Shown piece by piece: positions 1,482 through 50,324 of a DNA stretch of 64,000 nucleotides (positions within the stretch are counted from its first letter, which is position 1; each line of letters starts with the position of its first letter). The notes beneath the pieces were generated by a model. It was not told the origin of the DNA. It made no database searches and was given only the letters and a program-made list of their open reading frames with translations. The DNA lies in the IMG/VR virus record IMGVR_UViG_3300034104_003795, positions 62,001 through 126,000 of that record, one strand, 5' to 3'. The position numbers were made by a program, and so were the translations under genes.

Positions 1482-1533
1482 ATAACTCATTGAGAACCAA
1501 TAAGTTATAAGTCATTGATTATCAATCAGTTAT
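1482..1533. repeat. two copies of ~25 bp palindromic repeat (TAACTCATTGAWWATCAATGAGTTA family)
   Basis: ataactcattgagaaccaataagttat and aagtcattgattatcaatcagttat. Confidence 0.75.
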
Positions 1534-2481
1534 GATGGCATGTATTTTTTGATTCAGGTCTATAAATTTATTAGTTATATCCTGACAAATACCATTGTTA
1601 TAATTTTCGGAATTTTGAATAGGAATTATTTTTGATAAAAATCCAGAAGGTCTCAAATAATCAACTTTATCACGTATTCTAAAATTTTCCTGATACATAG
1701 TTTGTCCGTTTACTTCTTTATTATAATCGGAAACTCTACCTTGATTATGCGTTCTTACAAAACACAAAATCTTTTTTATTGAATTATGTCCCAATCCTAA
1801 ATAATCTAAACTTCCCAAAAATTCAAGATCATCAACAAAAAAAGATGTTAGATTTATTTTATCTTTAACTCTTTTTACCGAAGAAGTTCTCATTGAATAT
1901 GAATGATAAATTGATAATTGATTTGCTTTTGCCGCATGAATTATTGAAGTATAATGTTGCGGGGTTTCAAAGTAATTATCTATAAATTGCCACGGATTTG
2001 TCCACGGACTATTGTTTGGAATAGTATAACCTGCCCACATAGCTCTTGTTTTTTCGTGCTCAAATGGATTTTTGGTTTCAACTAATGATGTTAGTTTATT
2101 ATCATTAAAAAATATAGATGAACCATATGTAAAATCTAATTCACTATTAGTAGTATAAACATCTACTAAAAATTTCAAAGAATCATTTAATAGAATATCA
2201 TCATCATCTAATCTAATCATTATTTCTCCCAATGAAAGTTCTGGTGATAGAATCCAGCTATTTTGAAATAAATCATAACTAGATTTAGTACTCATATACA
2301 AAACTCTCTTATCAGAATTTCTTTGCTTAAACCATTTATAAATTGAAAAATTAATATCAGATGCAGAATCATCAAACATTAATACTTCCCAATCAGTATG
2401 TGATTGTAATTCAATTGACGCCAATGCCTCTTTTAAAAACTCTGGTCTATTGCATGTTCGTACTACTACGGTTACTTTCAT
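1522..2481 (-). CDS. glycosyltransferase family 2 protein
   Basis: VTVVVRTCNRPEFLKEALASI, FDDS and RLDDDD (DxD) motifs. Confidence 0.85.
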   Translation of the reverse strand: MKVTVVVRTCNRPEFLKEALASIELQSHTDWEVLMFDDSASDINFSIYKWFKQRNSDKRVLYMSTKSSYDLFQNSWILSPELSLGEIMIRLDDDDILLNDSLKFLVDVYTTNSELDFTYGSSIFFNDNKLTSLVETKNPFEHEKTRAMWAGYTIPNNSPWTNPWQFIDNYFETPQHYTSIIHAAKANQLSIYHSYSMRTSSVKRVKDKINLTSFFVDDLEFLGSLDYLGLGHNSIKKILCFVRTHNQGRVSDYNKEVNGQTMYQENFRIRDKVDYLRPSGFLSKIIPIQNSENYNNGICQDITNKFIDLNQKIHAIITD

Positions 2482-2482
2482 A

Positions 2483-2788
2483 TTAAATATTTACATTAGC
2501 TTTCCAAAACTGCCACCATTTTTTCTTTGGCGGTGGTACACATTGTGAGAACGGATTATCTCCAAATGAAACCGTATCCAAGTATTTAGCACTCATCATA
2601 TTCAAGAATACCTCTTGATATTTTTCAGGAATATTATCAAAGTCAGCTTCAATTTTTACATCTAAACTAATAGCACCATCACCAATTGTAGTTAATTTTA
2701 AGTTATTGTGAATAGTTACTACTTTGGCGGCTTTTACATTTATATTAGCACCACCACCTAAATATAATTCACGTTCTTTCTTTGTCAT
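2483..2788 (-). CDS. hypothetical protein
   Basis: 101 aa ORF, 1 nt gaps to neighbours. Confidence 0.7.
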   Translation of the reverse strand: MTKKERELYLGGGANINVKAAKVVTIHNNLKLTTIGDGAISLDVKIEADFDNIPEKYQEVFLNMMSAKYLDTVSFGDNPFSQCVPPPKKKWWQFWKANVNI

Positions 2789-2789
2789 A

Positions 2790-3194
2790 TTAATCTATTT
2801 TTATAACTCTAGTAACACGTCCGGTTACCATTTTCATTTTCTTTTGTGAAGCCGGTGGTTCACCTATGCCGTTAGCCATCCAGCTTTTTATTTCCATCTC
2901 ACCCAAATAATCGGATACGTTTGGAATATATTTTTTACCAAAATCTTCTAATATATGCCACTCACATATATCTTTTACCGAAACTAATTTACCATCTGAA
3001 TTATGGATATACTCGCCAAAAATTGGTATCATAACTTCGAAGATAAAAAACATATTATGTGTCAATGCACGATGTCTATTATCGGAAAAGTATTTTTTAC
3101 TACTATCCATTTTGTTATGAAGTGGTAAGTAATCTTCTACCTTGCCACCCCATAACTTAACGGATGATTGAGAATGTTTTAAGGGATTTGCCAC
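2790..3194 (-). CDS. conserved phage protein (DUF6915-like)
   Basis: MANPLKHSQSSVKLWGG..DYLPLHNKMD..HRALTH..HILEDFG pattern. Confidence 0.7.
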   Translation of the reverse strand: MANPLKHSQSSVKLWGGKVEDYLPLHNKMDSSKKYFSDNRHRALTHNMFFIFEVMIPIFGEYIHNSDGKLVSVKDICEWHILEDFGKKYIPNVSDYLGEMEIKSWMANGIGEPPASQKKMKMVTGRVTRVIKID

Positions 3195-3200
3195 TTTAAA

Positions 3201-7711: not shown

Positions 7712-7939
7712 TTATTTGTTATTGAATAAATTAGAAATTTGTGTTGGGGTATATCCACATTTGAACACATCATTCAAAGTACATACTGTATCGTACTTCA
7801 AATTTAACCAACTATCCGAATCACACAAATCATCAATACAATTTTGAATAGCGATTGGATACTTTTGAAGTTCGGCAAGAAGAACATTAATGTTATCAAC
7901 ATTCATTCGGTTGATAATTGGATTTTGAGAATTCATCAT
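7712..7939 (-). CDS. hypothetical protein
   Basis: First gene after promoter 7962-7993. Confidence 0.7.
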   Translation of the reverse strand: MMNSQNPIINRMNVDNINVLLAELQKYPIAIQNCIDDLCDSDSWLNLKYDTVCTLNDVFKCGYTPTQISNLFNNK

Positions 7940-7961: not shown

Positions 7962-7993
7962 TAAAACTACAAAATTACATTGAGACCACCAAA
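7962..7993 (-). promoter_or_regulatory. Bacteroidota sigma-A type promoter
   Basis: TTTG-N20-TAGTTTTA. Confidence 0.7.
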
Positions 7994-8020
7994 TTTTTAG
8001 GGTAAAATCTTTAAAAAAAG

Positions 8021-8091
8021 TTCATTGAAAATCAATGACTTATGGGTAATAAAATCAAATATTCGTAACTCATTGATAATCAACGGATTAC
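8021..8091. repeat. two palindromic repeat copies
   Basis: ttcattgaaaatcaatgacttat and gtaactcattgataatcaacggattac. Confidence 0.75.
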
Positions 8092-8191
8092 ATATTAAAG
8101 GGTTTCTAGGTAATTTTAGGGGTTATTTTCCAATAAAGGATGTCTAACCCTACCAACACCAAGAAACCCTTCAGGATTCGTTAAAAATAGG

Positions 8192-11882: not shown

Positions 11883-12083
11883 TTAATATTTACTAATTTT
11901 CTTTTCGTATTGTTTTGTAATTGTGATTGATTTTAATTCAGGATTACTATTTGCTATTATCATAATAGTCGAATAACTCAATCCTTTAATTATAATCTTA
12001 TCACCTGACTGTGATACTATTTCAATATCATGTGTTGTTTTGTAATTCATATTAGGCAACTTTATGATAAATTGTTTCACCAT
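11883..12083 (-). CDS. hypothetical protein
   Basis: ORF; start probably MNYKTT. Confidence 0.5.
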   Translation of the reverse strand: MVKQFIIKLPNMNYKTTHDIEIVSQSGDKIIIKGLSYSTIMIIANSNPELKSITITKQYEKKISKY

Positions 12084-12582
12084 TAGAGAATCTAGCGGTA
12101 ACTCCTAACTTCATAGAATAATCTTTGAATATATTTTCAGTTACTTCAACTAATTCATTCCTTAACTTCTCAGCTTTTTTCTCAGCCAATAAAGCGTAAG
12201 CTTTGATTTTAGAATTTGATAAAGCTGTATTGTATCCAATACCATTTTCTAATTCACCAATCTCATATTCATCACCATTGATAAAATAATGAGCGTTCCA
12301 ATCCAAATTCACACCTTCATAGTAACCACTACGAATAACAGGTGAAACCCAAACTTCTAAACTGAAATCGTTGTATGAAAACTCTTTTGTTAATGAACCC
12401 AAAACACGTGAAGGAAAACTTCTACATTCGTGCGGGTCACTTTTGTTACCATCGTACCAATCGGCGTGGTTTTTAAATTCATAAGTAAGATTATCTACTA
12501 AATCTTCATAATCCCATTCGTTCTCTAATGAACACGCGAAAATGTGGGTAGCGTTTACATTGTGGAAATTGCTTGTAGCCAT
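12052..12582 (-). CDS. hypothetical protein
   Basis: First gene after promoter 12606-12637. Confidence 0.7.
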   Translation of the reverse strand: MATSNFHNVNATHIFACSLENEWDYEDLVDNLTYEFKNHADWYDGNKSDPHECRSFPSRVLGSLTKEFSYNDFSLEVWVSPVIRSGYYEGVNLDWNAHYFINGDEYEIGELENGIGYNTALSNSKIKAYALLAEKKAEKLRNELVEVTENIFKDYSMKLGVTARFSNGETIYHKVA

Positions 12583-12605
12583 AATTTTTAAGTTTTATTA
12601 CATCG

Positions 12606-12637
12606 TAAAACTACAAAAAAGGCATGAAACTACCAAA
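12606..12637 (-). promoter_or_regulatory. Bacteroidota sigma-A type promoter
   Basis: TTTG-N20-TAGTTTTA. Confidence 0.7.
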
Positions 12638-12667
12638 TATTTTAGGGGTTATTTTTAGGGGTAAAGA

Positions 12668-12758
12668 CGTAACTAATTGATTCTCAATCAAGAATTTTTT
12701 AGGGGGCGTAACTGATTGATTTTCAATGATTTATAACTCATTGATTATCAACGAGTTA
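12668..12758. repeat. three palindromic repeat copies; first 32 bp identical to 16735-16766
   Basis: cgtaactaattgattctcaatcaagaattttt, gtaactgattgattttcaatgatttat, ataactcattgattatcaacgagtta. Confidence 0.8.
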
Positions 12759-16396: not shown

Positions 16397-16651
16397 TTAT
16401 TTATTATCAATTAAGTAAATTGTACCTTTAACATAAGGACCACCCCATCTTTGATATTCAAATAATTCATTCCATAACCAATCACAATAGTCATCGGTTA
16501 CACCTTTAGTCAAATCTTCATTAAAGAATGTTATTGCTTTAACAAACTTCAATCTTCGTTTAGCTAATTGCGGGTTAATACTTACTTCAATCATAGCATC
16601 GTTCAAATGTGAACCCACTATAATACCTAAATTTGTTTCAAAACTACTCAT
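16397..16651 (-). CDS. hypothetical protein
   Basis: First gene after promoter 16673-16704. Confidence 0.7.
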   Translation of the reverse strand: MSSFETNLGIIVGSHLNDAMIEVSINPQLAKRRLKFVKAITFFNEDLTKGVTDDYCDWLWNELFEYQRWGGPYVKGTIYLIDNK

Positions 16652-16672: not shown

Positions 16673-16704
16673 TAAAACTACAAAATAGTTACCAATCTAC
16701 CAAA
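16673..16704 (-). promoter_or_regulatory. Bacteroidota sigma-A type promoter
   Basis: TTTG-N20-TAGTTTTA. Confidence 0.7.
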
Positions 16705-16734: not shown

Positions 16735-16830
16735 CGTAACTAATTGATTCTCAATCAAGAATTTTTGGGCAAAAAATAACCCATTGAAAATCAATGAGTT
16801 ATGAATGTGTTGAAAATCAATGAGTTATGA
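16735..16830. repeat. three palindromic repeat copies
   Basis: cgtaactaattgattctcaatcaag, ataacccattgaaaatcaatgagttat, gttgaaaatcaatgagttat. Confidence 0.8.
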
Positions 16831-17194: not shown

Positions 17195-17626
17195 CTATTT
17201 TGAATTTTCCAAATCTAAATTGGCAGTGTACCATTCTAATATTTCTTCACCTGCTATTATATCCCTAGTTGCAACTCCATCTGTTGTTATATTAATATTT
17301 TCTTCATTTGGATATGCCGAATTACAATACGATACCGAATGACAAATGAAATTTATCCCTTTAAACAATCTAAATAATTTATAACCACAATCTTCGTTTA
17401 TAAAATACATATCCAAAAGGTCTTGTACCCCTTCTGGTAAATTTTTTAATTTATCTTTGGGAAGCATATACACACCCGTTTCTCCATCCCATTGTGGAAA
17501 TACTTGCTCTCCTTTTTTTATATCTTTAATTGCAAATACACCTATCCCGTGAATTGGTGATGGTGCAATTTTGCTTTTCACATTCATTTCTAAATGGTCT
17601 ATAACCTTTTGTATATTTGTATTCAT
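17195..17626 (-). CDS. SET domain protein (putative lysine methyltransferase)
   Basis: PSPIHGIGVFAIKDIKKGE...ATRDIIAGEEILEWY. Confidence 0.8.
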   Translation of the reverse strand: MNTNIQKVIDHLEMNVKSKIAPSPIHGIGVFAIKDIKKGEQVFPQWDGETGVYMLPKDKLKNLPEGVQDLLDMYFINEDCGYKLFRLFKGINFICHSVSYCNSAYPNEENINITTDGVATRDIIAGEEILEWYTANLDLENSK

Positions 17627-19161
17627 TAACTATAAAATTTTCCTGACATTAAATTCTTTATAAATTGTTCCTGTGTTTGTAATAACTTAGCTCCTTCATC
17701 CGCACGTCTTATAATTTTAGTGTGTAGTTGTTTTGTATAATGTATAAGAGAATATTTTTTTAATGTATTAAATACTGCGGGTTTAGATAGAGTTTCCAAT
17801 CCGTACAATGTCCAACACCAAACACCCCAACCAGATGAACCATTGTAACTGGAAAAATCAAATGTAGAAGGACTTCTATATTTACAAATTTCTATGATAT
17901 TTTTTACAAAATCACTCATTGGTAATTCGTTATTACAAAACTTCCAAAATTCTGAATCATTTCGTTTATTATAGTAATGGATTCGTATTAGGTCTTTATA
18001 CTCATCTACCAGAGTTCCCATAACCTCATTGTATCGTTTTAAATTTTGTTCTAAAAAAAATTCTTTTTTATTTAAAGAAAAGAAATTACTGAATAACGTA
18101 TCAACTTGTAATAACGTTGTATGAATTGACGTAGCTTGAAGTGGTTCTAAAAATGAAGATGATAATCCTATCGCTACAACATTTTTAATCCAAAATTTAT
18201 CTAATCTACCTGGATCAAAACTTAATTTTCTTATCGGTTGTATTTTCCTACCAGTTGTTTTTTCCAATTCTTCAAGCGCCTTATCATCACTTACAAATTT
18301 ATCGCAATATACATAACCACATCCATATCTTTCTTGCGTTGGTATTTGCCACATCCAACCATTCGGCATTGACCAAGCCAAAGTTTCTAATTTAGCTTCT
18401 TCCGGTCCTTTTTCGTATTGATGTATATAAGGTAATGCGGAATTTACGGGAAGTTCATTTGAATAACTTATCCATTTTGCACCCATTTTATTAATTAACT
18501 TCTTATGAAATCCAGTACAATCTATCCAAAAGTCTGCCTCTAACGGAATTAAGTTACCTTCCAATTTTACGCTATCACATTCACCTGTTATTGGATTTAT
18601 ATTAACATCATCAACTTTAGCATCTATGTGTTTTACACCGTTTTCTATACAAACACTTTTAAAATATTCACCAACTTTATGGGCATCAAAGTGATAACCA
18701 TGTATACCCATATTTTCTTTACCGTTAATGTGATAATCCGATATTCCTCTGGACATAAAATGTCCCGCTATGGATGAATCATAAAAATTACCCTGCATAC
18801 AGGAAGCAAGAAATTCACTATCTACGTTATATCCCGCGGTTTCAGACGGTTGTATGGGACTTAAAAATTCAGTACCAACCCCATTCCAATCTTTAAAACG
18901 TATTCCGTATTTTGGCACTGCACGTGACCCTTTAAAAAAGTTAAATTCAGTTTTTTTCAAAGCAGAAAAACGAGTAGCTACCATTTGTTGCATTAACGCA
19001 GTAGTTCCTTCTCCGGCCCCGATAATTGGTATATCGGAACTTTCAATTACAGTAATATCTATTTGCTCTAATCTATCCTGTTTGTATAATTGGTTTTGAT
19101 TTGCAAAGAATGCCGCAGTCAACCAACCCGCTGTTCCCCCACCTACTATAACAATTTTCAT
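17626..19161 (-). CDS. flavin-dependent (tryptophan) halogenase family protein
   Basis: GGGTAG, IGAGEG, K-YGIRF (catalytic Lys position), GYHFDA, IDCTGF, WMWQIP (WxWxIP), EPLQATSI. Confidence 0.88.
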   Translation of the reverse strand: MKIVIVGGGTAGWLTAAFFANQNQLYKQDRLEQIDITVIESSDIPIIGAGEGTTALMQQMVATRFSALKKTEFNFFKGSRAVPKYGIRFKDWNGVGTEFLSPIQPSETAGYNVDSEFLASCMQGNFYDSSIAGHFMSRGISDYHINGKENMGIHGYHFDAHKVGEYFKSVCIENGVKHIDAKVDDVNINPITGECDSVKLEGNLIPLEADFWIDCTGFHKKLINKMGAKWISYSNELPVNSALPYIHQYEKGPEEAKLETLAWSMPNGWMWQIPTQERYGCGYVYCDKFVSDDKALEELEKTTGRKIQPIRKLSFDPGRLDKFWIKNVVAIGLSSSFLEPLQATSIHTTLLQVDTLFSNFFSLNKKEFFLEQNLKRYNEVMGTLVDEYKDLIRIHYYNKRNDSEFWKFCNNELPMSDFVKNIIEICKYRSPSTFDFSSYNGSSGWGVWCWTLYGLETLSKPAVFNTLKKYSLIHYTKQLHTKIIRRADEGAKLLQTQEQFIKNLMSGKFYS

Positions 19162-23214: not shown

Positions 23215-23230
23215 ATTATTAAGTTGTTTG

Positions 23231-23311
23231 TGCCCCAAGAGAGATTCGAACTCTCACACCTCTCGATATCAGTTCCTAAAACTGATGTGTCTACCGTTCC
23301 ACCATCAGGGC
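23231..23311 (-). tRNA. tRNA-Leu(TAG)
   Basis: Cloverleaf, anticodon arm tcagt-ttTAGga-actga, long variable arm. Confidence 0.93.
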
Positions 23312-23839
23312 ATATTTTTGTAATGATTTTAAAAATAATTCAATTCCTTTGTTGTGATTAGCTTCCCAATCATCCGGATTACCGCTATCACTTACATATT
23401 TGTATGCAGTAAAATCAAATCCATAAATCTTACATACCTTTGCAATTGAGTATGCTTCCATATCACATATTACAGATGGTGTGGTTTGAAAATGGTCTTG
23501 TGTATAACATATATTATATCCCAATCCATTGAAATCAATATTACCCATCAATATTTCATTATCAAATGGTGTTTTTGTTTTATCTGCAAATGGTCTAGCG
23601 TCCATATCGTTTTGGACAAATGTTTTACACTTAAATAAACTACCAACCATAACGGCATGCCCACCCGCACTTCCGTAGTTTATAACTACTACATCTTTGG
23701 GGTCTAAATCTTTAAGAGTTTCAGTTGCTTTTATAGCCGCATTTACTTTTCCAACACCAGTATAAACAACTTTAACACCTTCCGGTGCTTTTTCCTTTGG
23801 AAACTCATTTTCTAATGCAACAAATAATATAACGTTCAT
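23291..23839 (-). CDS. mtnN: MTA/SAH nucleosidase-like phosphorylase
   Basis: TGVGKVNAA, INYGSAGG, Q.DMD, CDMEAY, KYVSD; last 21 nt run into tRNA-Leu. Confidence 0.8.
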   Translation of the reverse strand: MNVILFVALENEFPKEKAPEGVKVVYTGVGKVNAAIKATETLKDLDPKDVVVINYGSAGGHAVMVGSLFKCKTFVQNDMDARPFADKTKTPFDNEILMGNIDFNGLGYNICYTQDHFQTTPSVICDMEAYSIAKVCKIYGFDFTAYKYVSDSGNPDDWEANHNKGIELFLKSLQKYALMVER

Positions 23840-23850
23840 AACAATAAGTA

Positions 23851-24023
23851 TGCTGTTAGAGTAGGATTCGAACCATACAGGAGGAGATTCAAAAAGTAAC
23901 ATTTAGTGCTTGCAAGCTGGTGGTCAACCCCATATTACTTTTCTATTTCTTTATCCTCGCCCACGAGACGAGTGGGTGTGTTTGCCAGGTTATAACATAG
24001 ATAACCAATTTCACCATCTAACA
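23851..24023 (-). ncRNA. giant tRNA-like RNA (GTC anticodon, D-loop hairpin insertion, ~80 nt branched variable arm)
   Basis: Acceptor TGTTAGA/TCTAACA-G, D arm GTGAAATT..GGCAAACAC, anticodon arm cccac-tcGTCtc-gtggg, T loop GGTTCGAATCC. Confidence 0.75.
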
Positions 24024-27934: not shown

Positions 27935-27939
27935 ATGGC

Positions 27940-28033
27940 GTTCCATATAACTCACATTTGATAGCCCTATCGTGCTACTCACTCAATCCTACAACAGCTT
28001 TCAACTGAGAGATTGTAGGAATGTGTATGGAAC
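27940..28033 (-). ncRNA. candidate three-way-junction small RNA between tRNA-Val and tRNA-Tyr
   Basis: GTTCCATA/TATGGAAC, CACATT/AATGTG, CCTACAA/TTGTAGG, CAGTT-GAAA-GCTG. Confidence 0.45.
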
Positions 28034-28039
28034 ATGTTG

Positions 28040-28114
28040 TGGAAGTTACAGGATTCGAACCTATGACCCTCACGGTGTAAACGTGATGCTCTAAACCAAC
28101 TGAGCTAAACTTCC
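28040..28114 (-). tRNA. tRNA-Val(TAC)
   Basis: tcacg-ttTACac-cgtga. Confidence 0.93.
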
Positions 28115-28122
28115 TACTTATC

Positions 28123-28140
28123 CAATATGTCAAAGAACTT
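28123..28140 (-). promoter_or_regulatory. rrn boxA-like antitermination element
   Basis: AAGTTCTTTGACATATTG just after the first tRNA of the array; related copies at 26197-26211, 29536-29547, 30018-30029. Confidence 0.55.
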
Positions 28141-28147
28141 AATCTTG

Positions 28148-28219
28148 CGCTCCCTCTTGGATTCGAACCAAGGACCAACAGATTAACAGTCTGCTGCGCT
28201 ACCGCTGCGCCAAAGGAGC
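28148..28219 (-). tRNA. tRNA-Asn(GTT)
   Basis: gcaga-ctGTTaa-tctgt. Confidence 0.93.
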
Positions 28220-28221
28220 TT

Positions 28222-28262
28222 AAAACGAAAAAACCTCTAACCGATTTTATTCAGTTAGAGGT
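28222..28262 (-). terminator. intrinsic terminator / attenuator directly upstream of tRNA-Asn
   Basis: ACCTCTAACTG-aataaaat-CGGTTAGAGGT followed by TTTTTCGTTTT. Confidence 0.8.
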
Positions 28263-28288
28263 CTTTCTATTTAAGTTAAGTTATGTAA

Positions 28289-28450
28289 TTACCCAACATC
28301 AGTGTCCTCTAACTGCTTCGTACTAATATAATCCACCTTGCCTAAATTTAAGTTTGCCGGATTACTTAACGTACTAAACATACGAATCCCAGCCCACTCA
28401 TTTCTCAATGTAGGTTGCGAACAATTTGTATGTAGTGTTAAAGTTTTCAT
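28289..28450 (-). CDS. putative attenuator leader peptide (53 aa, all 20 amino acids)
   Basis: MKTLTLHTNCSQPTLRNEWAGIRMFSTLSNPANLNLGKVDYISTKQLEDTDVG; codons 46-49 (CAGTTAGAGG) are the exact complement of the terminator 5' arm. Confidence 0.65.
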   Translation of the reverse strand: MKTLTLHTNCSQPTLRNEWAGIRMFSTLSNPANLNLGKVDYISTKQLEDTDVG

Positions 28451-28600
28451 CACTGTTTGTTTATATAAGTATATAATAATTTTATTTTCCGAATCTTTGT
28501 TAGTTTTATCAGGCTTAAATTGGGGAACATATTGATATGCCCCCCTTTTCAAGTTGTAATAAAAATTAAGATATGAAACGAACAACTTTTCAGTTGTTAG

Positions 28601-28646
28601 TAGCTCTCTCTATTGGAATCGAACCAATATGCAACCATTGAGAAAG
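28601..28646 (-). ncRNA. tRNA-like minihelix (acceptor stem plus T arm, no anticodon arm)
   Basis: CTTTCTC/GAGAGAG stem, ATTGG-TTCGATT-CCAAT T arm, 11-nt linker containing TGG. Confidence 0.5.
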
Positions 28647-28659
28647 TAAAAACGCTGAG

Positions 28660-29520
28660 AATATACGTTGGGATAACTAGCTTTAGAAAGATTATTTTGT
28701 TTCCTTTCGTTTCCACATCCTTTTGAGATGTACCAGTCAATGCAGGTTATTATAGATTAACCACTCTTAAAGTTGTAACTTACTCACCTATTACTCCCCT
28801 TATTCAATCCTGCCGAACTGATTAAACCTTGCGGGTCTATAAGCTTTTCGTAGATATCACATTCGCCTTGCGGGCGTTTGTGGCTGGGAACAACTCCCAA
28901 CTATGTATGCACCTTTCGGTCACAACTGATGAACACTTTTGCTTTTATTTATAATTGAATAATCAAATCCGCATTTGATAAAAGTTTTGGTTCGTAGATG
29001 GATTCAGGTAGCGGTTCACCACTAGCTCTGTCCCCTTTTGAAGAACAGAATACTATACTACCCGATGCGTTATCTCAACGCCATACTTCAAGTCATCTTC
29101 ATTAATAGGGATTGGTGTCCCATATTAAAGGATAGTAACGGCACCACCCGTACACAGTCTTATCTTACGTCCTTTCGGATAGCTTGATTGTCAAGACCAC
29201 TTTGGTATTGAATCACGCAATAATAAAAAGGGATTAGCTTTCTATTTCTTACAATAATCCTATGAGTTATTCTTATCGTTCTTCCGAACTCAACTGAACA
29301 ATCTACAATTGCTCAGTCACCCAAACTCTTCTGCTACAGTGTTACCCTCACATACAAAGCCCAAATGATATCTCACTTGCCTACTCAAGCTCATAACCTT
29401 ACAGGGATATGAACCGCAAAATGCTTAACCAAACATTTCACTTTATCCTACTTTCGTAGTTTATTTAATGACCATAGGCGGCCATTTTGTACACTATATA
29501 ACACGAAGTTATTATGTGTA
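28660..29520 (-). ncRNA. large structured ncRNA, GOLLD-like (~860 nt)
   Basis: No minus-strand ORF >=60 aa in the track, higher GC, many GNRA-capped hairpins (CTAC-GAAA-GTAG, TCC-GAAA-GGA, ACC-GAAA-GGT, two GCAA loops), own promoter, next to phage tRNA cluster; family name not confirmed by a covariance search. Confidence 0.7.
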
Positions 29521-29564
29521 AATTATTTCAATAATGTAAAGAACTTTGTTATTTGATAACTTTA

Positions 29565-29596
29565 TAAAGATACGAAATCTTTTTCAAACTACCAAA
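29565..29596 (-). promoter_or_regulatory. Bacteroidota-type promoter (array unit 1; drives the GOLLD-like RNA)
   Basis: TTTGGTAGTTTGAAAAAGATTTCG-TATCTTTA. Confidence 0.8.
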
Positions 29597-29606
29597 TTTA
29601 TTTTTA

Positions 29607-29663
29607 AAGATTCTCAATTTTGTTTTCTGGTCAAACCAATCAACTACTTTATTTTTGAATCTT
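29607..29663 (-). ncRNA. candidate small RNA 1 of the promoter array
   Basis: Starts just after its promoter; ends pair (AAGATTC/GAATCTT). Confidence 0.45.
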
Positions 29664-29665
29664 CA

Positions 29666-29697
29666 TAAAGATACGATAATTTTTTCAAACTACCAAA
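29666..29697 (-). promoter_or_regulatory. Bacteroidota-type promoter (array unit 2)
   Basis: TTTG-N20-TATCTTTA. Confidence 0.8.
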
Positions 29698-29708
29698 TCT
29701 TTTTTTAA

Positions 29709-29791
29709 AAGTTATTAAGGTATCCGGCTTTATTAGGAGCTTGCGCCCCTCACACAATCGGTTTTATTATTGTTGGCTTCAACCTTAACTT
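29709..29791 (-). ncRNA. candidate small RNA 2 of the promoter array
   Basis: Closing stem AAGTTAAGG/CCTTAATAACTT; internal GGGGC-GCAA-GCTCC GNRA hairpin. Confidence 0.55.
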
Positions 29792-29794
29792 TGT

Positions 29795-29826
29795 TAAAGA
29801 TACGAAAGTTTTTTCAAACTACCAAA
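29795..29826 (-). promoter_or_regulatory. Bacteroidota-type promoter (array unit 3)
   Basis: TTTG-N20-TATCTTTA. Confidence 0.8.
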
Positions 29827-29836
29827 TCTTTTTTTA

Positions 29837-29934
29837 AATCTATTATAATGGGGTTGGGTTGTACCCTTTTCAATCTGCTTTCACACCCATCACTCCCAAA
29901 GAGCTGTCAGTATCAGATACCACTATTATAGATT
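29837..29934 (-). ncRNA. candidate small RNA 3 (co-transcribed after tRNA-fMet)
   Basis: Long closing stem AATCTATAATAGTGG/CCATTATAATAGATT. Confidence 0.5.
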
Positions 29935-29937
29935 TTG

Positions 29938-30009
29938 TTGCGAGGGATGGATTCGAACCACCGGCCTCCAGGTTATGAGCCTGGCGAGCTACCACTGCTC
30001 TACCTCACG
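29938..30009 (-). tRNA. tRNA-fMet(CAT), initiator
   Basis: C1:A72 mismatch, ccagg-ctCATaa-cctgg. Confidence 0.9.
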
Positions 30010-30030: not shown

Positions 30031-30062
30031 TAAAGATAGTACATTTTTTTGAAACGGCCAAA
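30031..30062 (-). promoter_or_regulatory. Bacteroidota-type promoter for tRNA-fMet
   Basis: TTTG-N20-TATCTTTA followed by a boxA-like element. Confidence 0.75.
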
Positions 30063-30093
30063 TCTTTTTTTCAAAATGTGGATAACTTTTTTA

Positions 30094-30118
30094 ATTCATT
30101 GATTATCAATGAGTTACG
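30094..30118. repeat. palindromic repeat copy
   Basis: attcattgattatcaatgagttacg. Confidence 0.7.
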
Positions 30119-31072: not shown

Positions 31073-31798
31073 TTATTTAGATTTTTGCATAATCTTTACC
31101 AATGACATTGCACTCTTTTTAACAGGAGCATCATCTTGATATCTAAGCGCAGATTGTACTTTTATATCTCTACCGGTTTCAGGATTTCTTACAGTTTTAT
31201 TAAGAATATCCTTTGGTAACATTTTGATTAATTTATCATCTCTTTCTGCAGATGATCCTGGTAAATTTTGTAAATTTCTTTGTGTACCTTTTTTTCTTTG
31301 AAATGCGAAAACTTGTTTGGTATTTCTCATTTTTGAATATGCTTGCTGCATTGTACCAGGATGCATATCCCCAACACTTTCTACTCTACCATTTTTATAA
31401 ACCAAAACACCTTTACCTTTGGTATCTTCGCCACCATACAAAACTGAATCCTGTGTGAATTCATTTCCTAATTGGTGAATATCTTTAATTGAAATGTTTG
31501 GAACGAATAAGGAAATTTCGGTTGAATCAACTAATTTATCTTTTGGACAATCAAAATAGTTTACTCTATTATCTTGACACTCTTGCCAATGACCTTCCAT
31601 CTCAAAAAATCCTAATCCTTTAGCTCTTATTTTATCCGCTAATATTTTGTTAGCCGCTTTATTTTCAGCAGGAGTATTTGCATATCTATAAGCAGTTATA
31701 ACTCCCCAACTTTTTACCTTCTTTTTACCTTGAACGTGTTGGAGAACCCTACCCAGTGAGGCTTCAGTTAGTTGTGCTATTTTACATCCTTTTTCCAT
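31073..31798 (-). CDS. conserved phage protein (DUF3293-like) with C-terminal NPETGRDIKVQSAL module
   Basis: E.SLGRV.QH, ITAYR, N...N..L, GHWQE, QDSVL. Confidence 0.6.
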   Translation of the reverse strand: MEKGCKIAQLTEASLGRVLQHVQGKKKVKSWGVITAYRYANTPAENKAANKILADKIRAKGLGFFEMEGHWQECQDNRVNYFDCPKDKLVDSTEISLFVPNISIKDIHQLGNEFTQDSVLYGGEDTKGKGVLVYKNGRVESVGDMHPGTMQQAYSKMRNTKQVFAFQRKKGTQRNLQNLPGSSAERDDKLIKMLPKDILNKTVRNPETGRDIKVQSALRYQDDAPVKKSAMSLVKIMQKSK

Positions 31799-40763: not shown

Positions 40764-41303
40764 TTATCGGTTTAATTTATTAATACATTCATCAATTTTA
40801 TCTCTTAATCGTCCACCAATCCCAAAATCACCATCAACCTGCACATGCCTCCACATTGGAATACGAGGTTTCATCCATTTGAACTCTGCACTTAATTTCA
40901 TATCATCAATTGCAATCCAATTACTAATCTTATTATCCTTTGCCCATTTTACAATTTGATGTGCTCTATCAAATTCCAAAGTTGAATTACTCATCTTATT
41001 CCAAATTCCCATTTGTCTGGTACTCATATGGGTTGTGATATCTACAATTGGTGCCGTAATTCCATAGTATTGAAATATACGCTTTAACTGAATAAAACTA
41101 AAATGTTTTTTCCAATCTGAACTCACTACCAAACTTGCATTGGTTTCATTACAAATTTTTTCAAGTGCTTGACAATCTTCTTCAACCCAAGGGTATGGTA
41201 TCGTAAAAGTTTTAGTTGCTTCATTTAGGGTAACTCTGCCATCACCCCACGTTCCCCACGCCAACGGTCCATCTACATCAATGAAAATAATCTTACGTCT
41301 CAT
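40764..41303 (-). CDS. HAD domain protein (Swiss-Army-knife RNA-repair-like)
   Basis: IFIDVDGPL, VVSSDW, WIAIDD, G.G. Confidence 0.8.
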   Translation of the reverse strand: MRRKIIFIDVDGPLAWGTWGDGRVTLNEATKTFTIPYPWVEEDCQALEKICNETNASLVVSSDWKKHFSFIQLKRIFQYYGITAPIVDITTHMSTRQMGIWNKMSNSTLEFDRAHQIVKWAKDNKISNWIAIDDMKLSAEFKWMKPRIPMWRHVQVDGDFGIGGRLRDKIDECINKLNR

Positions 41304-41320: not shown

Positions 41321-41352
41321 CAAATATACGAAATTTTACCGATTCTACCAAA
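41321..41352 (-). promoter_or_regulatory. Bacteroidota-type promoter
   Basis: TTTG-N20-TATATTTG. Confidence 0.8.
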
Positions 41353-41356: not shown

Positions 41357-41407
41357 TAACCCATTGATTTTCAATGACTTATAATCAGTTGATTTTCAAT
41401 GGGTTAT
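41357..41407. repeat. two palindromic repeat copies
   Basis: taacccattgattttcaatgacttat and aatcagttgattttcaatgggttat. Confidence 0.8.
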
Positions 41408-46565: not shown

Positions 46566-47771
46566 TTACCAAACAATCTTCTCACTATCATCTTCGGTTG
46601 GTTCGGTGAATAATGCCTCATCAGCTTTATCATCCTTAATATACTTTTGAACCAACTGCTTCACATACGTTCTTTCACTATCTACACCACCATCGTTAGA
46701 GAAGAATGGGAACATACTAATTTCAGCTGCTTCAAACAAACTGAAACCATCGTATAACAACCCAGCAGTTTCTACACTAGCACGAGTTGAAACACCGGTT
46801 GAAAGTTTACCATCACCTGTCTTTGCAATATCACGAGTGTGAGTAGCAATTTCAGCAACTGCTTTCAAATCTTCTTCATTAACTTGCGGATACATATACT
46901 TTAAGAGATTCAACTCTTGCTCATCATTCAACACATCCATTTCAATTGTAGTGAAACGGTCTAATATCGCTCTATCCAATACTCTAGTTGAAGTATATTC
47001 ACCACCAATGTTAGCGGTAGCGATAAAAGTAACACCATCAGCTACTTTAACAATTGGAGAATCAACAGCCTCATCTAAACGAAGGTAACGTTGTCCCAAA
47101 TCCAATACAGTCATTAGAATATTCCAAGCGTCAGGATGTGCTCTACTCAACTCATCCAATAGGATAACAGCGTTTGGAGTACTAATTGCTTTTACGAAAG
47201 CAGATTCAGCGAAGAATGTACCTTTCTTACTATCAAAGTGTGTGTTACCAATTAGGGTTGCTCTCGCATCTTGCGTTGCACCAAGGTTGAAATAGAAATC
47301 AGGTCTCTTTAAGCCTTTGGTAAGTGCTTTAGCCGCTAATGTCTTACCACAACCAGCCGGTCCTGTCATCATAATATTCTTAGCTCTAACAGCTGAACGA
47401 ATAAGGTATTTCCACTTTAAGTCAGAAATAACCAATCCTTCAGGTTTAAGTTTAACCGATTCGTTATGGATAAAATCGGTAATCTCTTTATGATTATCCA
47501 ACTTCTCTACATTAACTTCGGCGTTACTTTTCAATGGAGCAACCAAGTTATCAAATTCAGTCATATCGGTTAAGCGGTATTGAATCTTACCACCACTACC
47601 AACTACCTTACGAAGTGCTTTACCTGCTTCATAAGCTTTTTTACGAGTAGGAGTACCAATTCCTTGTGTACCTACTATTTTACCAGCAGTATTTGCTAGT
47701 TTGAAATGTGAGCCAATCTTTACAACTTTAAAGATTTGTTTACTCATTTTGTCTACATTAGGCTTTGCCAT
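46566..47771 (-). CDS. MoxR-family AAA+ ATPase (CbbQ/NirQ/CobS-like)
   Basis: GPAGCGKT, ILLDELSR, ATAN.G.EY, LDRA..DRF, STR. Confidence 0.9.
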   Translation of the reverse strand: MAKPNVDKMSKQIFKVVKIGSHFKLANTAGKIVGTQGIGTPTRKKAYEAGKALRKVVGSGGKIQYRLTDMTEFDNLVAPLKSNAEVNVEKLDNHKEITDFIHNESVKLKPEGLVISDLKWKYLIRSAVRAKNIMMTGPAGCGKTLAAKALTKGLKRPDFYFNLGATQDARATLIGNTHFDSKKGTFFAESAFVKAISTPNAVILLDELSRAHPDAWNILMTVLDLGQRYLRLDEAVDSPIVKVADGVTFIATANIGGEYTSTRVLDRAILDRFTTIEMDVLNDEQELNLLKYMYPQVNEEDLKAVAEIATHTRDIAKTGDGKLSTGVSTRASVETAGLLYDGFSLFEAAEISMFPFFSNDGGVDSERTYVKQLVQKYIKDDKADEALFTEPTEDDSEKIVW

Positions 47772-47828
47772 AATTAAGGGGTTTTAATATATAATAATAA
47801 ATGTTTCTTTCTTATCAATCTTACTATG

Positions 47829-47860
47829 TAAAGATACGAAATCTTTTTGAATCTACCAAA
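47829..47860 (-). promoter_or_regulatory. Bacteroidota-type promoter
   Basis: TTTG-N20-TATCTTTA. Confidence 0.8.
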
Positions 47861-47876
47861 TTTATTTTTTGGGGTT

Positions 47877-47942
47877 ATAAGTGGTTGAAAATCAACGAGT
47901 TAGGAGTGATTTTCGTAACTCGTTGATAATCAATCAGTTATG
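47877..47942. repeat. two palindromic repeat copies
   Basis: aagtggttgaaaatcaacgagtta and gtaactcgttgataatcaatcagttat. Confidence 0.75.
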
Positions 47943-50163
47943 AATTTTGTGGTTTGCTCATAAATAATCGGTTCATTGTACGTGCTACCTCATTAACATT
48001 TGTTACGTTAATATAACTAGCAGCAGGTCCATAACACTCTTTGAATGTTCTAGCTGAACCACTACTATTTTCATCCATTTCGTAACTACTATCACTAACG
48101 AAATAACTCAATACTTTGATACCCATACCTTCAATTGATTTCATCATCTTACGAGTATGTTTAGCCGCATTACTACCACTATAACTCATACCCTTTCCAT
48201 GAAAGTAAGGTTCACCATCCGATATGTTTAGGAAGTATGAATCAACTTCACCATTACTACCTACCATTTGTTTCATCACTGCCTCAAAACACAATCCTTC
48301 AGGTGTAGTTCCGTTTGGATGTAAGTAACCAAACAATTGTTTAACCTTCATAAACTTATCAACTCTACTATCGTAAGCCAATACAATGTAAGGTAACTCA
48401 CCGGTTGTTGTACGGAAACTAATCTGAATATTAAGGTTAGGAATCATATCCACTGCCTTAGCCAATGCTACGATGTTAGTCATAGTTTTTCTCCACTTCT
48501 CACCACCCATTGAACCACTAGCATCTACCGAAATATGTAGGTTAGCTTTCTTAAACATATCAATCTCTCTAGTATAGAATACGTGCTCATTACCATAACC
48601 CAACGATGATACCATTCTCTTATCCATCTTACCTACAAGCTGACGGTTAAAGATAGTTTCTCTACTCTCACCTCTAACTTGCATTTTCTTACCCAACAAT
48701 GTGCCGATACGAATACCTTCGGCAACTTCTTTAGAATATTGGTCATACATCGTATCTTCAGTCTTATTATAACGTTTAGATGTAAGTGGGAAGTTTTCTT
48801 GCTCCATTAAGTTACGAGTCATCTTCTTAACCACAACACACTCAATACCTTTGAATGAATTACCATTACCATAATAGTCTTGTGCTACAACTTTCATCTC
48901 TGCACCAGCTTCTTCAATTGATTCCAATTGTTTTGCTTCGGTTGATGATACTTTGGCTTTCTTAATCTTACCACGTAAGAACTCTTTTTGTTTTTCTATC
49001 TTCTTACGAATAATATCAATCTGTCTTTGAGATAAACGTCCTTCCGCCGGCTTACCATTACCTTTACCTTTACCAGGTTTAATAACAATCTTACCCTTCA
49101 CACCTTTACCATCTTCGGCAGGTTCGTTACCATCACCACTCACATCACTATCACCATCATCACCACTACCATTCTCATTATCACCATTCTCACTATCACC
49201 ATCATCGCCACTCATATCAACTTCAATATCATCTTCACCAGCCTCTTGCTCACCTTCACCGGCTTGCCCATTACCGCTACCCTGTCCTTGTCCTTTTTGT
49301 TGTTGTTGTGGAGTAAGTGGTTCGATTGCGTCAATAAGAATAGCGTAAACTTCTAATGCTATTTTAAGTGCATCTTCGGTTGTTTTCAATCTACTAATCT
49401 CATTAAGTTTAATAATCCTAGCAATTTCTGGCATACGTTTCAACGCGTTTGGTTTACTGAACTTTGAATGTAAGTTAATCAAACGGAACATATATGATTC
49501 AAAGTTTTCTTCGGTGAATTCATCCGATTTCATACCCCTATCAATAGCAGGGTCATTGAAGTACTTGTCATACATTGAACGATAGTAATCTCTATAACCG
49601 GGTGCTGATTTGTAGATGAAGTTATCAATCCTTCTATCTTCTACATAGTTCAATATGTCTTTCACAACACCTGCGAAATATGTAACACCCTTTTGATTTG
49701 AAATTTCATCTAAACGTTTGGATTCTTCAATACCAATAATTCTAATGATTACCATTTCCAAATCTCTCAATATGTCAAAGTTGGAAAGTTTAATGTGTGA
49801 ACCTTCGTGAAGTGCCAAACCCACCGCCGGGTCAAACTCCTTTGGTTCAGCGATGTTAGCGGAAATAGTTACTACCTTACCATCGGTATAAGAATCACCT
49901 TTGGTAGAAAACTTAACAGGTATAGATTGACCTGTTACAATAGATACGAAGTTAGCAATCGCTCTACGATGTGCTGCTAACTTATACAAGTTCTTTGTAG
50001 CCAATTCCTTCGTGGAATAAGATGAATATACGGGAGCAGAATAATCCCAATCATCCATCCACCAAGAAGATTTACCATAAGAACTATATGATTTACTTTT
50101 TTTAGATTTGCCACTAACTAGGTGGTCTTTTGTACCTGTCTTAAAATCTGTGTACCAACTCAT
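47938..50163 (-). CDS. VWA domain protein (CobT-like) with N-terminal HExxH domain and acidic Gly/Asp linker
   Basis: ALHEGSH, N..ED.RI, low-complexity D/G/E tract, MIDAS DASGSM, GTTPEG, ISDGEP; start trimmed to MSWYTD. Confidence 0.85.
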   Translation of the reverse strand: MSWYTDFKTGTKDHLVSGKSKKSKSYSSYGKSSWWMDDWDYSAPVYSSYSTKELATKNLYKLAAHRRAIANFVSIVTGQSIPVKFSTKGDSYTDGKVVTISANIAEPKEFDPAVGLALHEGSHIKLSNFDILRDLEMVIIRIIGIEESKRLDEISNQKGVTYFAGVVKDILNYVEDRRIDNFIYKSAPGYRDYYRSMYDKYFNDPAIDRGMKSDEFTEENFESYMFRLINLHSKFSKPNALKRMPEIARIIKLNEISRLKTTEDALKIALEVYAILIDAIEPLTPQQQQKGQGQGSGNGQAGEGEQEAGEDDIEVDMSGDDGDSENGDNENGSGDDGDSDVSGDGNEPAEDGKGVKGKIVIKPGKGKGNGKPAEGRLSQRQIDIIRKKIEKQKEFLRGKIKKAKVSSTEAKQLESIEEAGAEMKVVAQDYYGNGNSFKGIECVVVKKMTRNLMEQENFPLTSKRYNKTEDTMYDQYSKEVAEGIRIGTLLGKKMQVRGESRETIFNRQLVGKMDKRMVSSLGYGNEHVFYTREIDMFKKANLHISVDASGSMGGEKWRKTMTNIVALAKAVDMIPNLNIQISFRTTTGELPYIVLAYDSRVDKFMKVKQLFGYLHPNGTTPEGLCFEAVMKQMVGSNGEVDSYFLNISDGEPYFHGKGMSYSGSNAAKHTRKMMKSIEGMGIKVLSYFVSDSSYEMDENSSGSARTFKECYGPAASYINVTNVNEVARTMNRLFMSKPQNS

Positions 50164-50194
50164 ATAAAGGGGTTTAATTTTGAATGAATATACC

Positions 50195-50226
50195 CAAATA
50201 TACAAAGAAGTTTTCAGACCACCAAA
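50195..50226 (-). promoter_or_regulatory. Bacteroidota-type promoter
   Basis: TTTG-N20-TATATTTG. Confidence 0.75.
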
Positions 50227-50245
50227 TATTTTTTGAAATATTTTT

Positions 50246-50324
50246 TAAGTCATTGGAAATCAATAAGTTATAATACGTTGGAAATCAATGAGTTACATAA
50301 GTCATTGAAAATCAATTAATTACG
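50246..50324. repeat. three palindromic repeat copies
   Basis: aagtcattggaaatcaataagtta, gttggaaatcaatgagttac, aagtcattgaaaatcaattaatta. Confidence 0.8.

What the first reader, a model, noticed from the sequence alone, without database searches (positions are those of the whole stretch)
1482..50324. About 18 copies of a 25 bp palindrome, clustered upstream of host-type promoters at eight loci
Seen: consensus ~TAACTCATTGAWWATCAATGAGTTA in groups of 1-3 at 1482, 8021, 12668, 16735, 30094, 41357, 47877 and 50246. Each group lies 5-150 bp upstream of a TTTG-N20-TAnnTTTR promoter, often with an AACCCCTAAAA tract between. Loci 12668 and 16735 share 32 identical bp. Established: dyad sites in tandem imply a dimeric DNA-binding protein, and promoter-linked repeats (PeSLs) shuffle early gene modules in T4-like phages. 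Inference: operator or activator sites of a phage master regulator, nucleoid or segregation anchors, or recombination sites that make early genes exchangeable cassettes.
Basis: partly seen in the sequence, partly recalled or inferred. Interest (0 to 1): 0.6.

Follow-up and report, generated by a model that had tools for sequence, protein, structure and literature searches.

The report
IHF-type dyad sites before phage promoters
The 25-bp palindromes are real, and their conserved letters match a two-fold symmetric integration-host-factor (IHF) site, so they most likely recruit a host DNA-bending protein just upstream of one subclass of early promoters in a T4-like jumbo phage of freshwater Bacteroidota.

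Summary
There are 18 copies at 8 loci in the window and 32 copies at 13 loci in the 274-kb phage genome. All are intergenic, and none is expected by chance.

The phage is T4-like (Gp23 capsid protein). Nearly all its genes lie on the minus strand, and it uses Bacteroidota-type promoters. Each cluster runs: stop codon, then 1-3 palindromes, then 4-157 bp, then a promoter.

Conservation is in sequence, not in pairing. The blocks TAA / TTGA / TCAA / TTA are nearly invariant. The four bases between them vary freely, with no covariation in 62 sites from six related phages. Most copies fold weakly and lack a T-run.

The skeleton equals two inverted IHF consensus half-sites (WATCAA-N4-TTR), and its TT and AA steps are 9 bp apart. 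A matrix built from these sites ranks lambda attP sites H1, H2 and H' at #2, #4 and #8 of about 97,000 positions.

No HU/IHF-family (DNABII) protein or clear regulator is encoded by the phage. The same dyad occurs in unrelated small phages, which points to a host reader.

The linked promoters form a distinct subclass. Gene-content breakpoints are not enriched at the sites.

Best reading: cassettes built like PeSLs (promoter-early stem-loops), in which the "stem-loop" is an IHF-type architectural site. Binding itself is untested.

The parts
1483..1532 (.). Cluster 1: two abutting 25-bp dyads (1483-1507, 1508-1532). The stop codon of the glycosyltransferase gene (1522-2481) lies inside the second dyad.
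1319..1350 (-). Host-type promoter (-33 TTTGG, -7 TATCTTTA) 133 bp downstream of cluster 1. It drives the 156-aa ORF at 825-1295.
8018..8090 (.). Cluster 2: dyads at 8018-8042 and 8066-8090. The proximal dyad is followed by a T-run.
7962..7993 (-). Subclass-B promoter (ends TAGTTTTA) 25 bp from cluster 2. It drives ORF 7712-7939.
12670..12758 (.). Cluster 3: dyads at 12734-12758 and 12709-12733, plus an asymmetric unit at 12670-12694 (one intact arm and an A/T tract).
12606..12637 (-). Subclass-B promoter 33 bp from cluster 3. It drives ORF 12052-12582.
16737..16827 (.). Cluster 4: dyads at 16803-16827 and 16777-16801, plus an asymmetric unit at 16737-16761. The 16777 dyad is the only clean hairpin with a T6 run (-10.2 kcal/mol). 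The cluster shares 32 identical bp with cluster 3.
16673..16704 (-). Subclass-B promoter 33 bp from cluster 4. It drives ORF 16397-16651.
30092..30116 (.). Cluster 5: a single dyad, followed by a DnaA-box-like TTATCCACA.
30031..30062 (-). Subclass-B promoter 30 bp from cluster 5. It drives tRNA-Met (29937-30009) at the head of the tRNA/GOLLD region.
41357..41406 (.). Cluster 6: two abutting dyads (41382-41406, 41357-41381).
41321..41352 (-). Promoter 5 bp from cluster 6 (ends TATATTTG). It drives the HAD_SAK_2 gene at 40764-41303.
47878..47940 (.). Cluster 7: dyads at 47916-47940 and 47878-47902, starting at the stop codon of the VWA/CobT-like gene. It is kept at the same place in relatives with at least 60% amino-acid identity.
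47829..47860 (-). Subclass-B promoter 18 bp from cluster 7. It drives the MoxR-type AAA gene at 46566-47771.
50246..50322 (.). Cluster 8: three dyads (50298-50322, 50271-50295, 50246-50270). The cluster as a whole folds weakly as RNA (z = -1.3).
50195..50226 (-). Promoter 20 bp from cluster 8. It drives the 755-aa VWA/CobT-like gene at 47938-50205.

Best explanation
Each 25-bp palindrome is a two-fold symmetric binding site of the IHF/HU (DNABII) type: TAA-N4-TTGA-www-TCAA-N4-TTA, which is two inverted WATCAA-N4-TTR half-sites.

Shown:
- The conserved letters and the free N4 gap match the IHF consensus.
- The TT step (positions 8/9) and the AA step (17/18) are 9 bp apart, which is the spacing of the two proline-induced kinks.
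- The sites are intergenic. In 36 of 41 clusters across six related phages they lie 4-33 bp upstream of the -33 box.
- The linked promoters form a subclass whose -7 box ends TTTA(C) rather than the canonical TTTG.

Inferred:
- A host DNABII homodimer, of the Bacteroides BHFa kind, binds each dyad and bends the DNA sharply.
- Abutting copies 25 bp apart build a compact bent array.
- This array stimulates or times the weaker promoter subclass, as IHF does upstream of lambda pL or Mu Pe, and marks the border between early transcription units.
- The whole unit is built like a T4-type PeSL cassette, but the 'stem-loop' is read mainly as duplex DNA. A terminator role survives in only a few copies.
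For: Sequence rather than pairing is conserved:
- TTGA/TCAA and TAA/TTA are 29-32 of 32 conserved. Positions 4, 6, 7 and 19, 20, 22 form Watson-Crick pairs in only 10, 10 and 16 of 32 copies.
- In 62 unique sites from six phages, pairing at the four inner positions equals the shuffle expectation (P = 0.14-0.87).
- Complementarity between neighbouring copies is no higher than between copies at different loci.
- Single copies fold at a mean of -3.4 kcal/mol, against -11.1 for the perfect consensus, and few have T-runs.
- The phage has about 25 ordinary GC-rich hairpin-plus-T-run terminators elsewhere.

Match to IHF:
- The consensus elements WATCAA, TTR four bp away, two AA steps 9 bp apart and an optional A-tract are described in PMC1874591.
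- The lambda H' site read from NC_001416 matches the 25-mer consensus at 18 of 25 positions by my hand count. That includes 13 of 14 core positions (CATTGnTTATCAAT).
- A PWM from the 32 sites ranks H' third of 48,478 lambda positions. The 13-mer half-site PWM ranks H1, H2 and H' at #2, #4 and #8 of about 97,000.
- Strict half-sites number 129 in the genome against 83 expected, and the whole excess lies inside the palindromes.

A host reader is more likely than a phage one:
- No DNABII protein is found in this phage or its relatives.
- The same dyad occurs 3-5 times in unrelated ~35-kb phages among AAACAAT iterons. These share only metabolic genes with this phage.
- It also flanks the MoxR/VWA gene pair in a distant T4-like relative that uses another promoter type.
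- Bacteroidota have 1-3 classical HU/IHF proteins per genome (PMC5499826). [quoted passage not shown]

Promoter link: TTTA versus TTTG gives Fisher p = 0.0014. The clusters are kept at orthologous places in relatives.
Against: - No binding has been shown, and the host and its DNABII proteins are unknown.
- The cultured relative Flavobacterium phage immuto, and the sister clades with 50-56% identity, lack the dyad. It is therefore not a general feature of Bacteroidota phages.
- In the distant relative G005, the same palindrome has perfect stems plus T7 runs and looks like an ordinary terminator. A hairpin origin or a dual role is therefore likely.
- Distances to the promoter fall in several classes (4/14/24, 17-20, 29-33 bp). 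That does not fit a single helical face.
- The IHF consensus was defined for a proteobacterial heterodimer.
Confidence: 0.5

Rival explanations
1. The palindromes are only the stem-loop halves of PeSL-type terminator/promoter cassettes. As RNA hairpins they end the upstream early transcript. Their shared sequence reflects copying between cassettes, not a protein reader.
For: - The phage is T4-like.
- The order stop codon, palindrome, promoter matches PeSLs (PMC4122927).
- Whole clusters fold well as RNA (z = -4 to -8.7 for 6 of 8).
- Relative G005 has perfect copies with T7 runs.
- More distant relatives have GC-rich terminators at the same place.
- One copy (window 16777) is a clean terminator.
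- One compensatory change is seen between orthologues at window 47.9 kb.
Against: - There is no covariation at 4 of 11 stem pairs in 62 sites, and no extra complementarity between neighbours.
- The mean hairpin energy is -3.4 kcal/mol, and several loci have no copy better than -3.
- T-runs are mostly missing.
- Asymmetric units occur in both orientations.
- The outermost TAA/TTA pairs are the best conserved, which is unexpected for a stem.
- The phage uses normal terminators elsewhere.
- An RNA-library contig bridges cluster 7 without a difference from the reference. This is weak evidence, because contigs cannot show transcript ends and DNA carry-over is possible.
Confidence: 0.2
2. The palindromes are operators of a phage-encoded dimeric regulator of unknown fold that switches the promoter subclass on or off. 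The likeness to IHF sites is coincidental.
For: - Dyad symmetry, tandem sites and a tight link to a distinct promoter subclass fit this idea.
- The motif is confined to one clade among close relatives, as a co-evolving regulator-operator pair would be.
- Most small ORFs of the phage have no known family.
Against: - No HTH regulator, MotA or DNABII protein was found. The only HTH-like hit is an HNH homing endonuclease.
- The TTGA and TCAA centres are 7 bp apart, which is tight for two recognition helices (inference).
- The PWM picks all three lambda attP IHF sites.
- The dyad is present in unrelated phages that share only two metabolic-type genes (asparagine synthase, dUTPase) with this phage.
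- Only a small part of the proteome was screened, so this rival is not excluded.
Confidence: 0.17
3. The palindromes are recombination or mobility sites, either PeSL-type exchange points or REP/BIME-like mobile palindromes, that shuffle early-gene cassettes.
For: - Two cassettes share a 32-bp identical stretch.
- Copy number changes between orthologous clusters.
- The motif has a patchy distribution across relatives and appears in unrelated phages.
- A GIY-YIG endonuclease gene sits beside a palindrome in this phage, and its homologue does so in a distant relative.
Against: - Breakpoints against G001 are not enriched at palindrome junctions (8/13 versus 117/197, p = 1.0).
- The clusters are stable at orthologous positions.
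- The block-wise conservation needs a sequence reader, not just homology between copies.
- No tyrosine recombinase or RAYT transposase was searched for.
Confidence: 0.06

Closest known systems
PeSLs (promoter-early stem-loops) of T4-type phages (Arbiol et al. 2010, PMC2839356; Comeau et al. 2014, PMC4122927)
   Same: Both occur in T4-like phages. Both are composite intergenic cassettes with a conserved palindrome just upstream of a strong host-sigma early promoter. Both are repeated many times in the region of small accessory genes, and their consensus differs between phage clades.
   Different: PeSL stem-loops are described as effective terminators with simple stems such as A3-4G3-loop-C3T3-4. 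Here the stems are mostly mismatched and lack T-runs, the conserved letters match an IHF site, the copies are tandem at 25 bp, and no enrichment at gene-content breakpoints was found.
IHF binding sites, for example lambda attP H1/H2/H', and the sites upstream of lambda pL and Mu Pe
   Same: They share WATCAA-N4-TTR, the kink steps 9 bp apart and a core nearly identical to H'. They also sit upstream of promoters, or among iterons in the unrelated small phages.
   Different: Known IHF sites are asymmetric, with one consensus half plus an A/T-rich half, and are read by a heterodimer. These sites are two-fold symmetric, tandem, and found in phages of a phylum that has HU/IHF-like proteins (presumed homodimers) of untested specificity.
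REP/BIME elements of enterobacteria
   Same: Both are clusters of imperfect extragenic palindromes placed after stop codons. Some BIMEs carry IHF sites.
   Different: REPs are chromosomal, about 35-40 bp long, keep their pairing and are linked to RAYT transposases. None of this was seen or tested here.
Intrinsic (Rho-independent) terminators
   Same: Both have a palindrome directly after a gene. A few copies here, and the G005 relatives, have a T-run.
   Different: Most copies lack a stable stem and a T-run. The phage's ordinary terminators are GC-rich and unrelated in sequence.
TF1 of Bacillus phage SPO1 (a phage-encoded HU-type protein binding at early promoters)
   Same: Both involve a DNABII-type protein acting at phage early promoters.
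   Different: TF1 is phage-encoded and prefers hmU DNA. No DNABII gene was found in this phage.

Membership tests
PeSL composite promoter/terminator cassette | Found in a T4-type phage | tested here: met
   Gp23 (PF07068), E = 8e-75. The closest cultured capsid is that of Flavobacterium phage immuto, at 52% identity.
PeSL composite promoter/terminator cassette | Strong host-sigma-type early promoter with a conserved stem-loop just upstream | tested here: met
   TTTGG-N17-19-TAnnTTT[AG] lies 4-33 bp after the last palindrome in 36 of 41 clusters.
PeSL composite promoter/terminator cassette | The stem-loop is an effective transcription terminator | tested here: inconclusive
   Most copies are weak hairpins without T-runs, and there is no covariation. 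Whole clusters do fold, and the G005 copies look like terminators. No end-mapping data are available.
PeSL composite promoter/terminator cassette | Enriched at indels and replacements between close relatives | tested here: not met
   8/13 versus 117/197 junctions, Fisher p = 1.0, against G001.
IHF/DNABII binding site | WATCAA followed four bp later by TTR | tested here: met
   Lambda attP sites H1, H2 and H' rank #2, #4 and #8 with the half-site PWM.
IHF/DNABII binding site | Two AA (TT) steps 9 bp apart for proline intercalation | tested here: met
   T8T9 and A17A18 are invariant in 32 of 32 copies. The rule is taken from PMC1874591.
IHF/DNABII binding site | Bound and bent by a DNABII protein | not testable with these tools
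   The phage has no DNABII gene. The host genome is not identified.
Intrinsic terminator | Stable hairpin followed by a U-run | tested here: not met
   Only 1-2 of 32 copies pass a hairpin-plus-T-run screen that finds 35 sites genome-wide, about 25 of them ordinary GC-rich terminators.
Operator of a phage HTH regulator | A cognate regulator gene in the phage | tested here: inconclusive
   HTH_3 gives one sub-threshold hit, which is an HNH endonuclease. MotA is absent. Only part of the proteome was screened.
REP/BIME | A RAYT transposase and pairing-preserving palindromes | not tested
   Pairing is not preserved. No search for a RAYT transposase was made.

The most novel reading that the evidence does not exclude
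The dyad TAA-N4-TTGA-W3-TCAA-N4-TTA may be the recognition element of a homodimeric IHF-like host factor in a group of freshwater bacteria whose genes lack Shine-Dalgarno sites (probably Bacteroidota). Unrelated phages would exploit it independently. T4-like jumbo phages use it as tandem bending arrays that switch a subclass of early promoters. Small ~35-kb phages use it among AAACAAT iterons, about 1.4 kb upstream of a gene with a sub-threshold large-terminase match, in a layout like lambda cosB or a replication origin. If so, this would be the first defined specific site for a Bacteroidota DNABII protein.
Probability: 0.35. Interest if true: 0.7.

Novelty: new variant of a known kind. Interest (0 to 1): 0.55.

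Why it matters
Early transcription control in Bacteroidota phages is almost unknown. No specific DNA site is known to me for the HU/IHF-type proteins that have expanded in this phylum, and the literature searches here turned up none.

A 25-bp element that can be synthesised and tested by gel shift would:
- give a direct handle on which host protein these phages recruit;
- show how a weaker promoter subclass is switched;
- show whether PeSL-like cassettes can work through DNA architecture rather than termination.

It also offers a simple sequence mark for finding early regulatory units, and possibly for linking uncultured phages that share a host group.

Tried and rejected
- **Close DNA relatives:** a megablast of 6 kb against GenBank phages found nothing.
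- **Host identification:** a scan of bacterial genomes with the phage's tryptophan halogenase gave only distant non-Bacteroidota hits. Relatives cannot be drawn for a virus record. I therefore could not test whether the dyad is enriched in Bacteroidota chromosomes.
- **DNABII genes:** Pfam Bac_DNA_binding and HU-HIG gave nothing in a six-frame search. A small HMM built from E. coli IhfA and HupB found nothing in twelve phage genomes or contigs. The best weak hit is a SAM-lyase-family protein.
- **Phage regulators:** HTH_3 gave one sub-threshold hit, in an HNH endonuclease, and MotA gave none.
- **A shared 'reader' gene:** a gene common to this phage and a distant relative that sits next to palindromes turned out to be a GIY-YIG endonuclease.
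- **RNA evidence:** four metatranscriptome runs are held only as contigs. They cover the flanking genes, and one contig bridges cluster 7. Contigs cannot show transcript ends, and breaks inside palindromes may be assembly effects.
- **Pairing between neighbouring copies:** this looked attractive in cluster folds and in one orthologue pair. It is not above the between-locus background.
- **Cultured relatives:** Flavobacterium phage immuto, RM378, Mel-JY01 and LR756508 lack the dyad.
- **Spacing to the promoter:** no single helical phase was found.

Full report
**1. What is there**

The window is bases 62001-126000 of a 273,997-bp virus record. The record has about 32% G+C, and nearly all genes lie on the minus strand. 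It encodes a T4-type major capsid protein (Gp23, E = 8e-75). The closest cultured capsid is that of Flavobacterium phage immuto, at 52% identity. The phage is found in lake-water metagenomes.

Two features point to a Bacteroidota host. Promoters have the Bacteroidota form TTTG-N19-TAnnTTTG (70 on the coding strand against about 7 in shuffles). Leaders are A-rich without Shine-Dalgarno sites.

The palindrome is real. There are 20 strand matches at up to 3 mismatches against 0 expected. The genome holds 32 copies at 13 loci, all between 22 and 112 kb. That is the region of small accessory genes. Every locus reads, on the coding strand: end of a gene (the stop codon is often inside the first copy), 1-3 copies (often exactly 25 bp apart), a short spacer, then a promoter.

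**2. Hairpin or duplex site?**

The blocks TAA (1-3), T5, TTGA (8-11), TCAA (15-18) and TTA (23-25) are nearly invariant. Positions 4, 6, 7 and their partners 22, 20, 19 vary, and they form Watson-Crick pairs in only 10, 10 and 16 of 32 copies.

I collected 62 unique sites from this phage and five relatives (G001, G006-G008, G010). Pairing at the four inner positions equals the shuffle expectation (P = 0.14-0.87). Cluster folds suggested that neighbouring copies pair with each other. However, complementarity between neighbours is no higher than between copies from different loci.

Single copies fold at a mean of -3.4 kcal/mol, against -11.1 for a perfect consensus, and few are followed by T-runs. 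The phage has about 25 ordinary GC-rich terminators with T-runs elsewhere. One-armed units, with one intact arm plus an A/T tract, occur in both orientations.

Selection therefore acts on particular letters of duplex DNA, not on pairing.

**3. What reads it?**

The skeleton TAA-N4-TTGA-www-TCAA-N4-TTA is YAA-N4-TTGATW joined to WATCAA-N4-TTR. These are two inverted copies of the IHF consensus. The four canonical IHF elements are listed in PMC1874591: WATCAA, TTR four bp away, two AA steps 9 bp apart where the prolines intercalate, and an optional A-tract. In the palindrome the invariant T8T9 and A17A18 steps are exactly 9 bp apart. The variable N4 bases are the N4 of the consensus.

I read the lambda attP region from NC_001416. 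By my hand count, the H' site matches the 25-mer consensus at 18 of 25 positions, and its core CATTGCTTATCAAT differs from the phage core at one base.

As an objective test I built a matrix from the 32 sites and scanned all of lambda. H' ranks third of 48,478 positions. The 13-mer half-site matrix ranks H1, H2 and H' at second, fourth and eighth of about 97,000.

Strict half-sites are in excess in the phage genome (129 against 83 expected). The whole excess lies within the palindromes, so the dyad is the functional unit.

**4. Host or phage protein?**

No DNABII gene was found in the phage or its relatives. There is no MotA, and the only HTH-like hit is an HNH endonuclease.

A collection-wide pattern scan found the same dyad in several other settings:
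- 3-5 copies in ~35-kb phages of 46-50% G+C (G011, G012), lying among about 20 AAACAAT iterons about 1.4 kb upstream of a gene with a sub-threshold large-terminase match (Terminase_6N, 21.2 bits against a cut-off of 22);
- a short unrelated fragment (G013);
- a distant T4-like relative (G015), where it flanks the MoxR/VWA gene pair but sits upstream of a different, sigma-70-like promoter.

The small phages share only asparagine synthase and dUTPase-like genes with this phage. A host-encoded reader is the simpler explanation.

Bacteroidota have 1-3 classical HU/IHF proteins per genome plus large HU expansions (PMC5499826). [quoted passage not shown]

Against generality, the sister clades at 50-56% identity and the cultured relatives lack the dyad.

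**5. Link to promoters**

Promoters preceded by palindromes end TA(k)(y)TTTA(C)..TGTAAtAAA. The roughly 30 other strong promoters end TATATTTGTATA. The split is 11 TTTA to 2 TTTG for linked promoters, against 15 to 30 for the rest (Fisher p = 0.0014).

Across six phages, 36 of 41 clusters end 4-33 bp before the -33 box, with favoured distances of 4/14/24, 17-20 and 29-33 bp. This close coupling fits an upstream architectural element, but it is not a single helical phase.

I infer that a bent nucleoprotein array stimulates or times a promoter subclass with a weaker -7 box. This step is inference only.

**6. Evolution**

The clusters are kept at orthologous places in relatives down to about 60% protein identity. 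Copy numbers and N4 bases change freely between them.

In the more distant G005, the same palindrome has perfect stems and T7 runs and sits before promoters, as a classic PeSL-type terminator. Other relatives have unrelated GC-rich terminators at the same place.

The element therefore probably began as, or doubles as, a terminator hairpin. In this clade the pairing constraint has been relaxed while the protein-type letters are kept.

Gene-content breakpoints against G001 are not enriched at palindrome junctions. One 32-bp stretch is identical between two cassettes.

**7. Verdict**

The elements are built like PeSLs but read like symmetric IHF sites, so I class them as a new variant of a known kind.

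My confidence is about 0.8 that they act as duplex protein-binding sites. It is about 0.5 for the full statement: a host DNABII reader acting as an upstream architectural element of a promoter subclass.

RNA-library contigs neither support nor exclude termination.

Noticed in passing
window 28652-29065 (-): A full-length GOLLD RNA (RF02032, 306.8 bits, E = 7e-87) lies inside the tRNA cluster. It is preceded by a row of host-type promoters at window 30174, 30062, 29826, 29697 and 29596.
   Followed up: partly
window 23230-30009 (-): A cluster of 26 tRNA genes on the coding strand, including three tRNA-Met.
   Followed up: no
whole genome; promoters listed: There are two subclasses of Bacteroidota-type promoters. 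About 30 end TATATTTGTATA. About 13 end TAkyTTTAC..TGTAAtAAA, and these are the ones preceded by palindromes.
   Followed up: partly
window 30066-30080; genome 44.5 kb and 47.5 kb; also L019, L096, G010 and L148/L154: Exact DnaA-box sequences (TTATCCACA) lie next to palindromes. The genome has 9 against 3.7 expected, and 3 of them are within 80 bp of a palindrome. The same pairing recurs in relatives.
   Followed up: partly
window 12600-12670, 7995-8015, 8100-8130 and others: A recurrent ACCCCTAAAA-like tract lies between palindromes and promoters. ACCCC(T)T often sits just before start codons.
   Followed up: no
window 46566-50205 (-): A MoxR-type AAA ATPase (401 aa) and a 755-aa VWA/CobT-like protein form two single-gene units. 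Each unit is preceded by a palindrome cluster. The pair, with its palindromes, recurs in a distant relative (L035/G015).
   Followed up: partly
window 31073-31798 (-): An S-adenosylmethionine-lyase-family protein (PF23780, E = 5e-9), a possible anti-restriction function.
   Followed up: no
window 17626-19161 (-): A tryptophan-halogenase-family flavoenzyme (E = 7e-89). It is absent from relative G001, and its nearest bacterial homologues are only about 30% identical.
   Followed up: no
window 56123-56686 (-); genome 41987-42421 (-): An HNH homing endonuclease with a NUMOD-like HTH, and a GIY-YIG (SegE-like) endonuclease. The GIY-YIG gene is directly downstream of a palindrome, and its homologue has the same neighbourhood in L035.
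   Followed up: partly
genome 42-48 kb (L253), outside the window: A stretch of low coding density and higher G+C. It contains G-rich repeats, four spaced palindromes and DnaA boxes. It may be a regulatory or origin-like region.
   Followed up: no
L023 10680-11280 (G011, a 35-kb phage with terminal repeats): About 20 AAACAAT iterons in both orientations, interleaved with three of the same dyads. The region lies about 1.4 kb upstream of a gene with a sub-threshold large-terminase match (Terminase_6N, 21.2 bits). The layout resembles lambda cosB or an iteron origin with IHF sites.
   Followed up: partly
G005 (L202-L216): A 288-kb relative with terminal repeats. It carries 6-8 nearly identical perfect copies of TAACCCATTGAwwwTCAATGGGTTA plus T7, each before a promoter whose -7 region reads TATATTAGCT.
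   Followed up: partly
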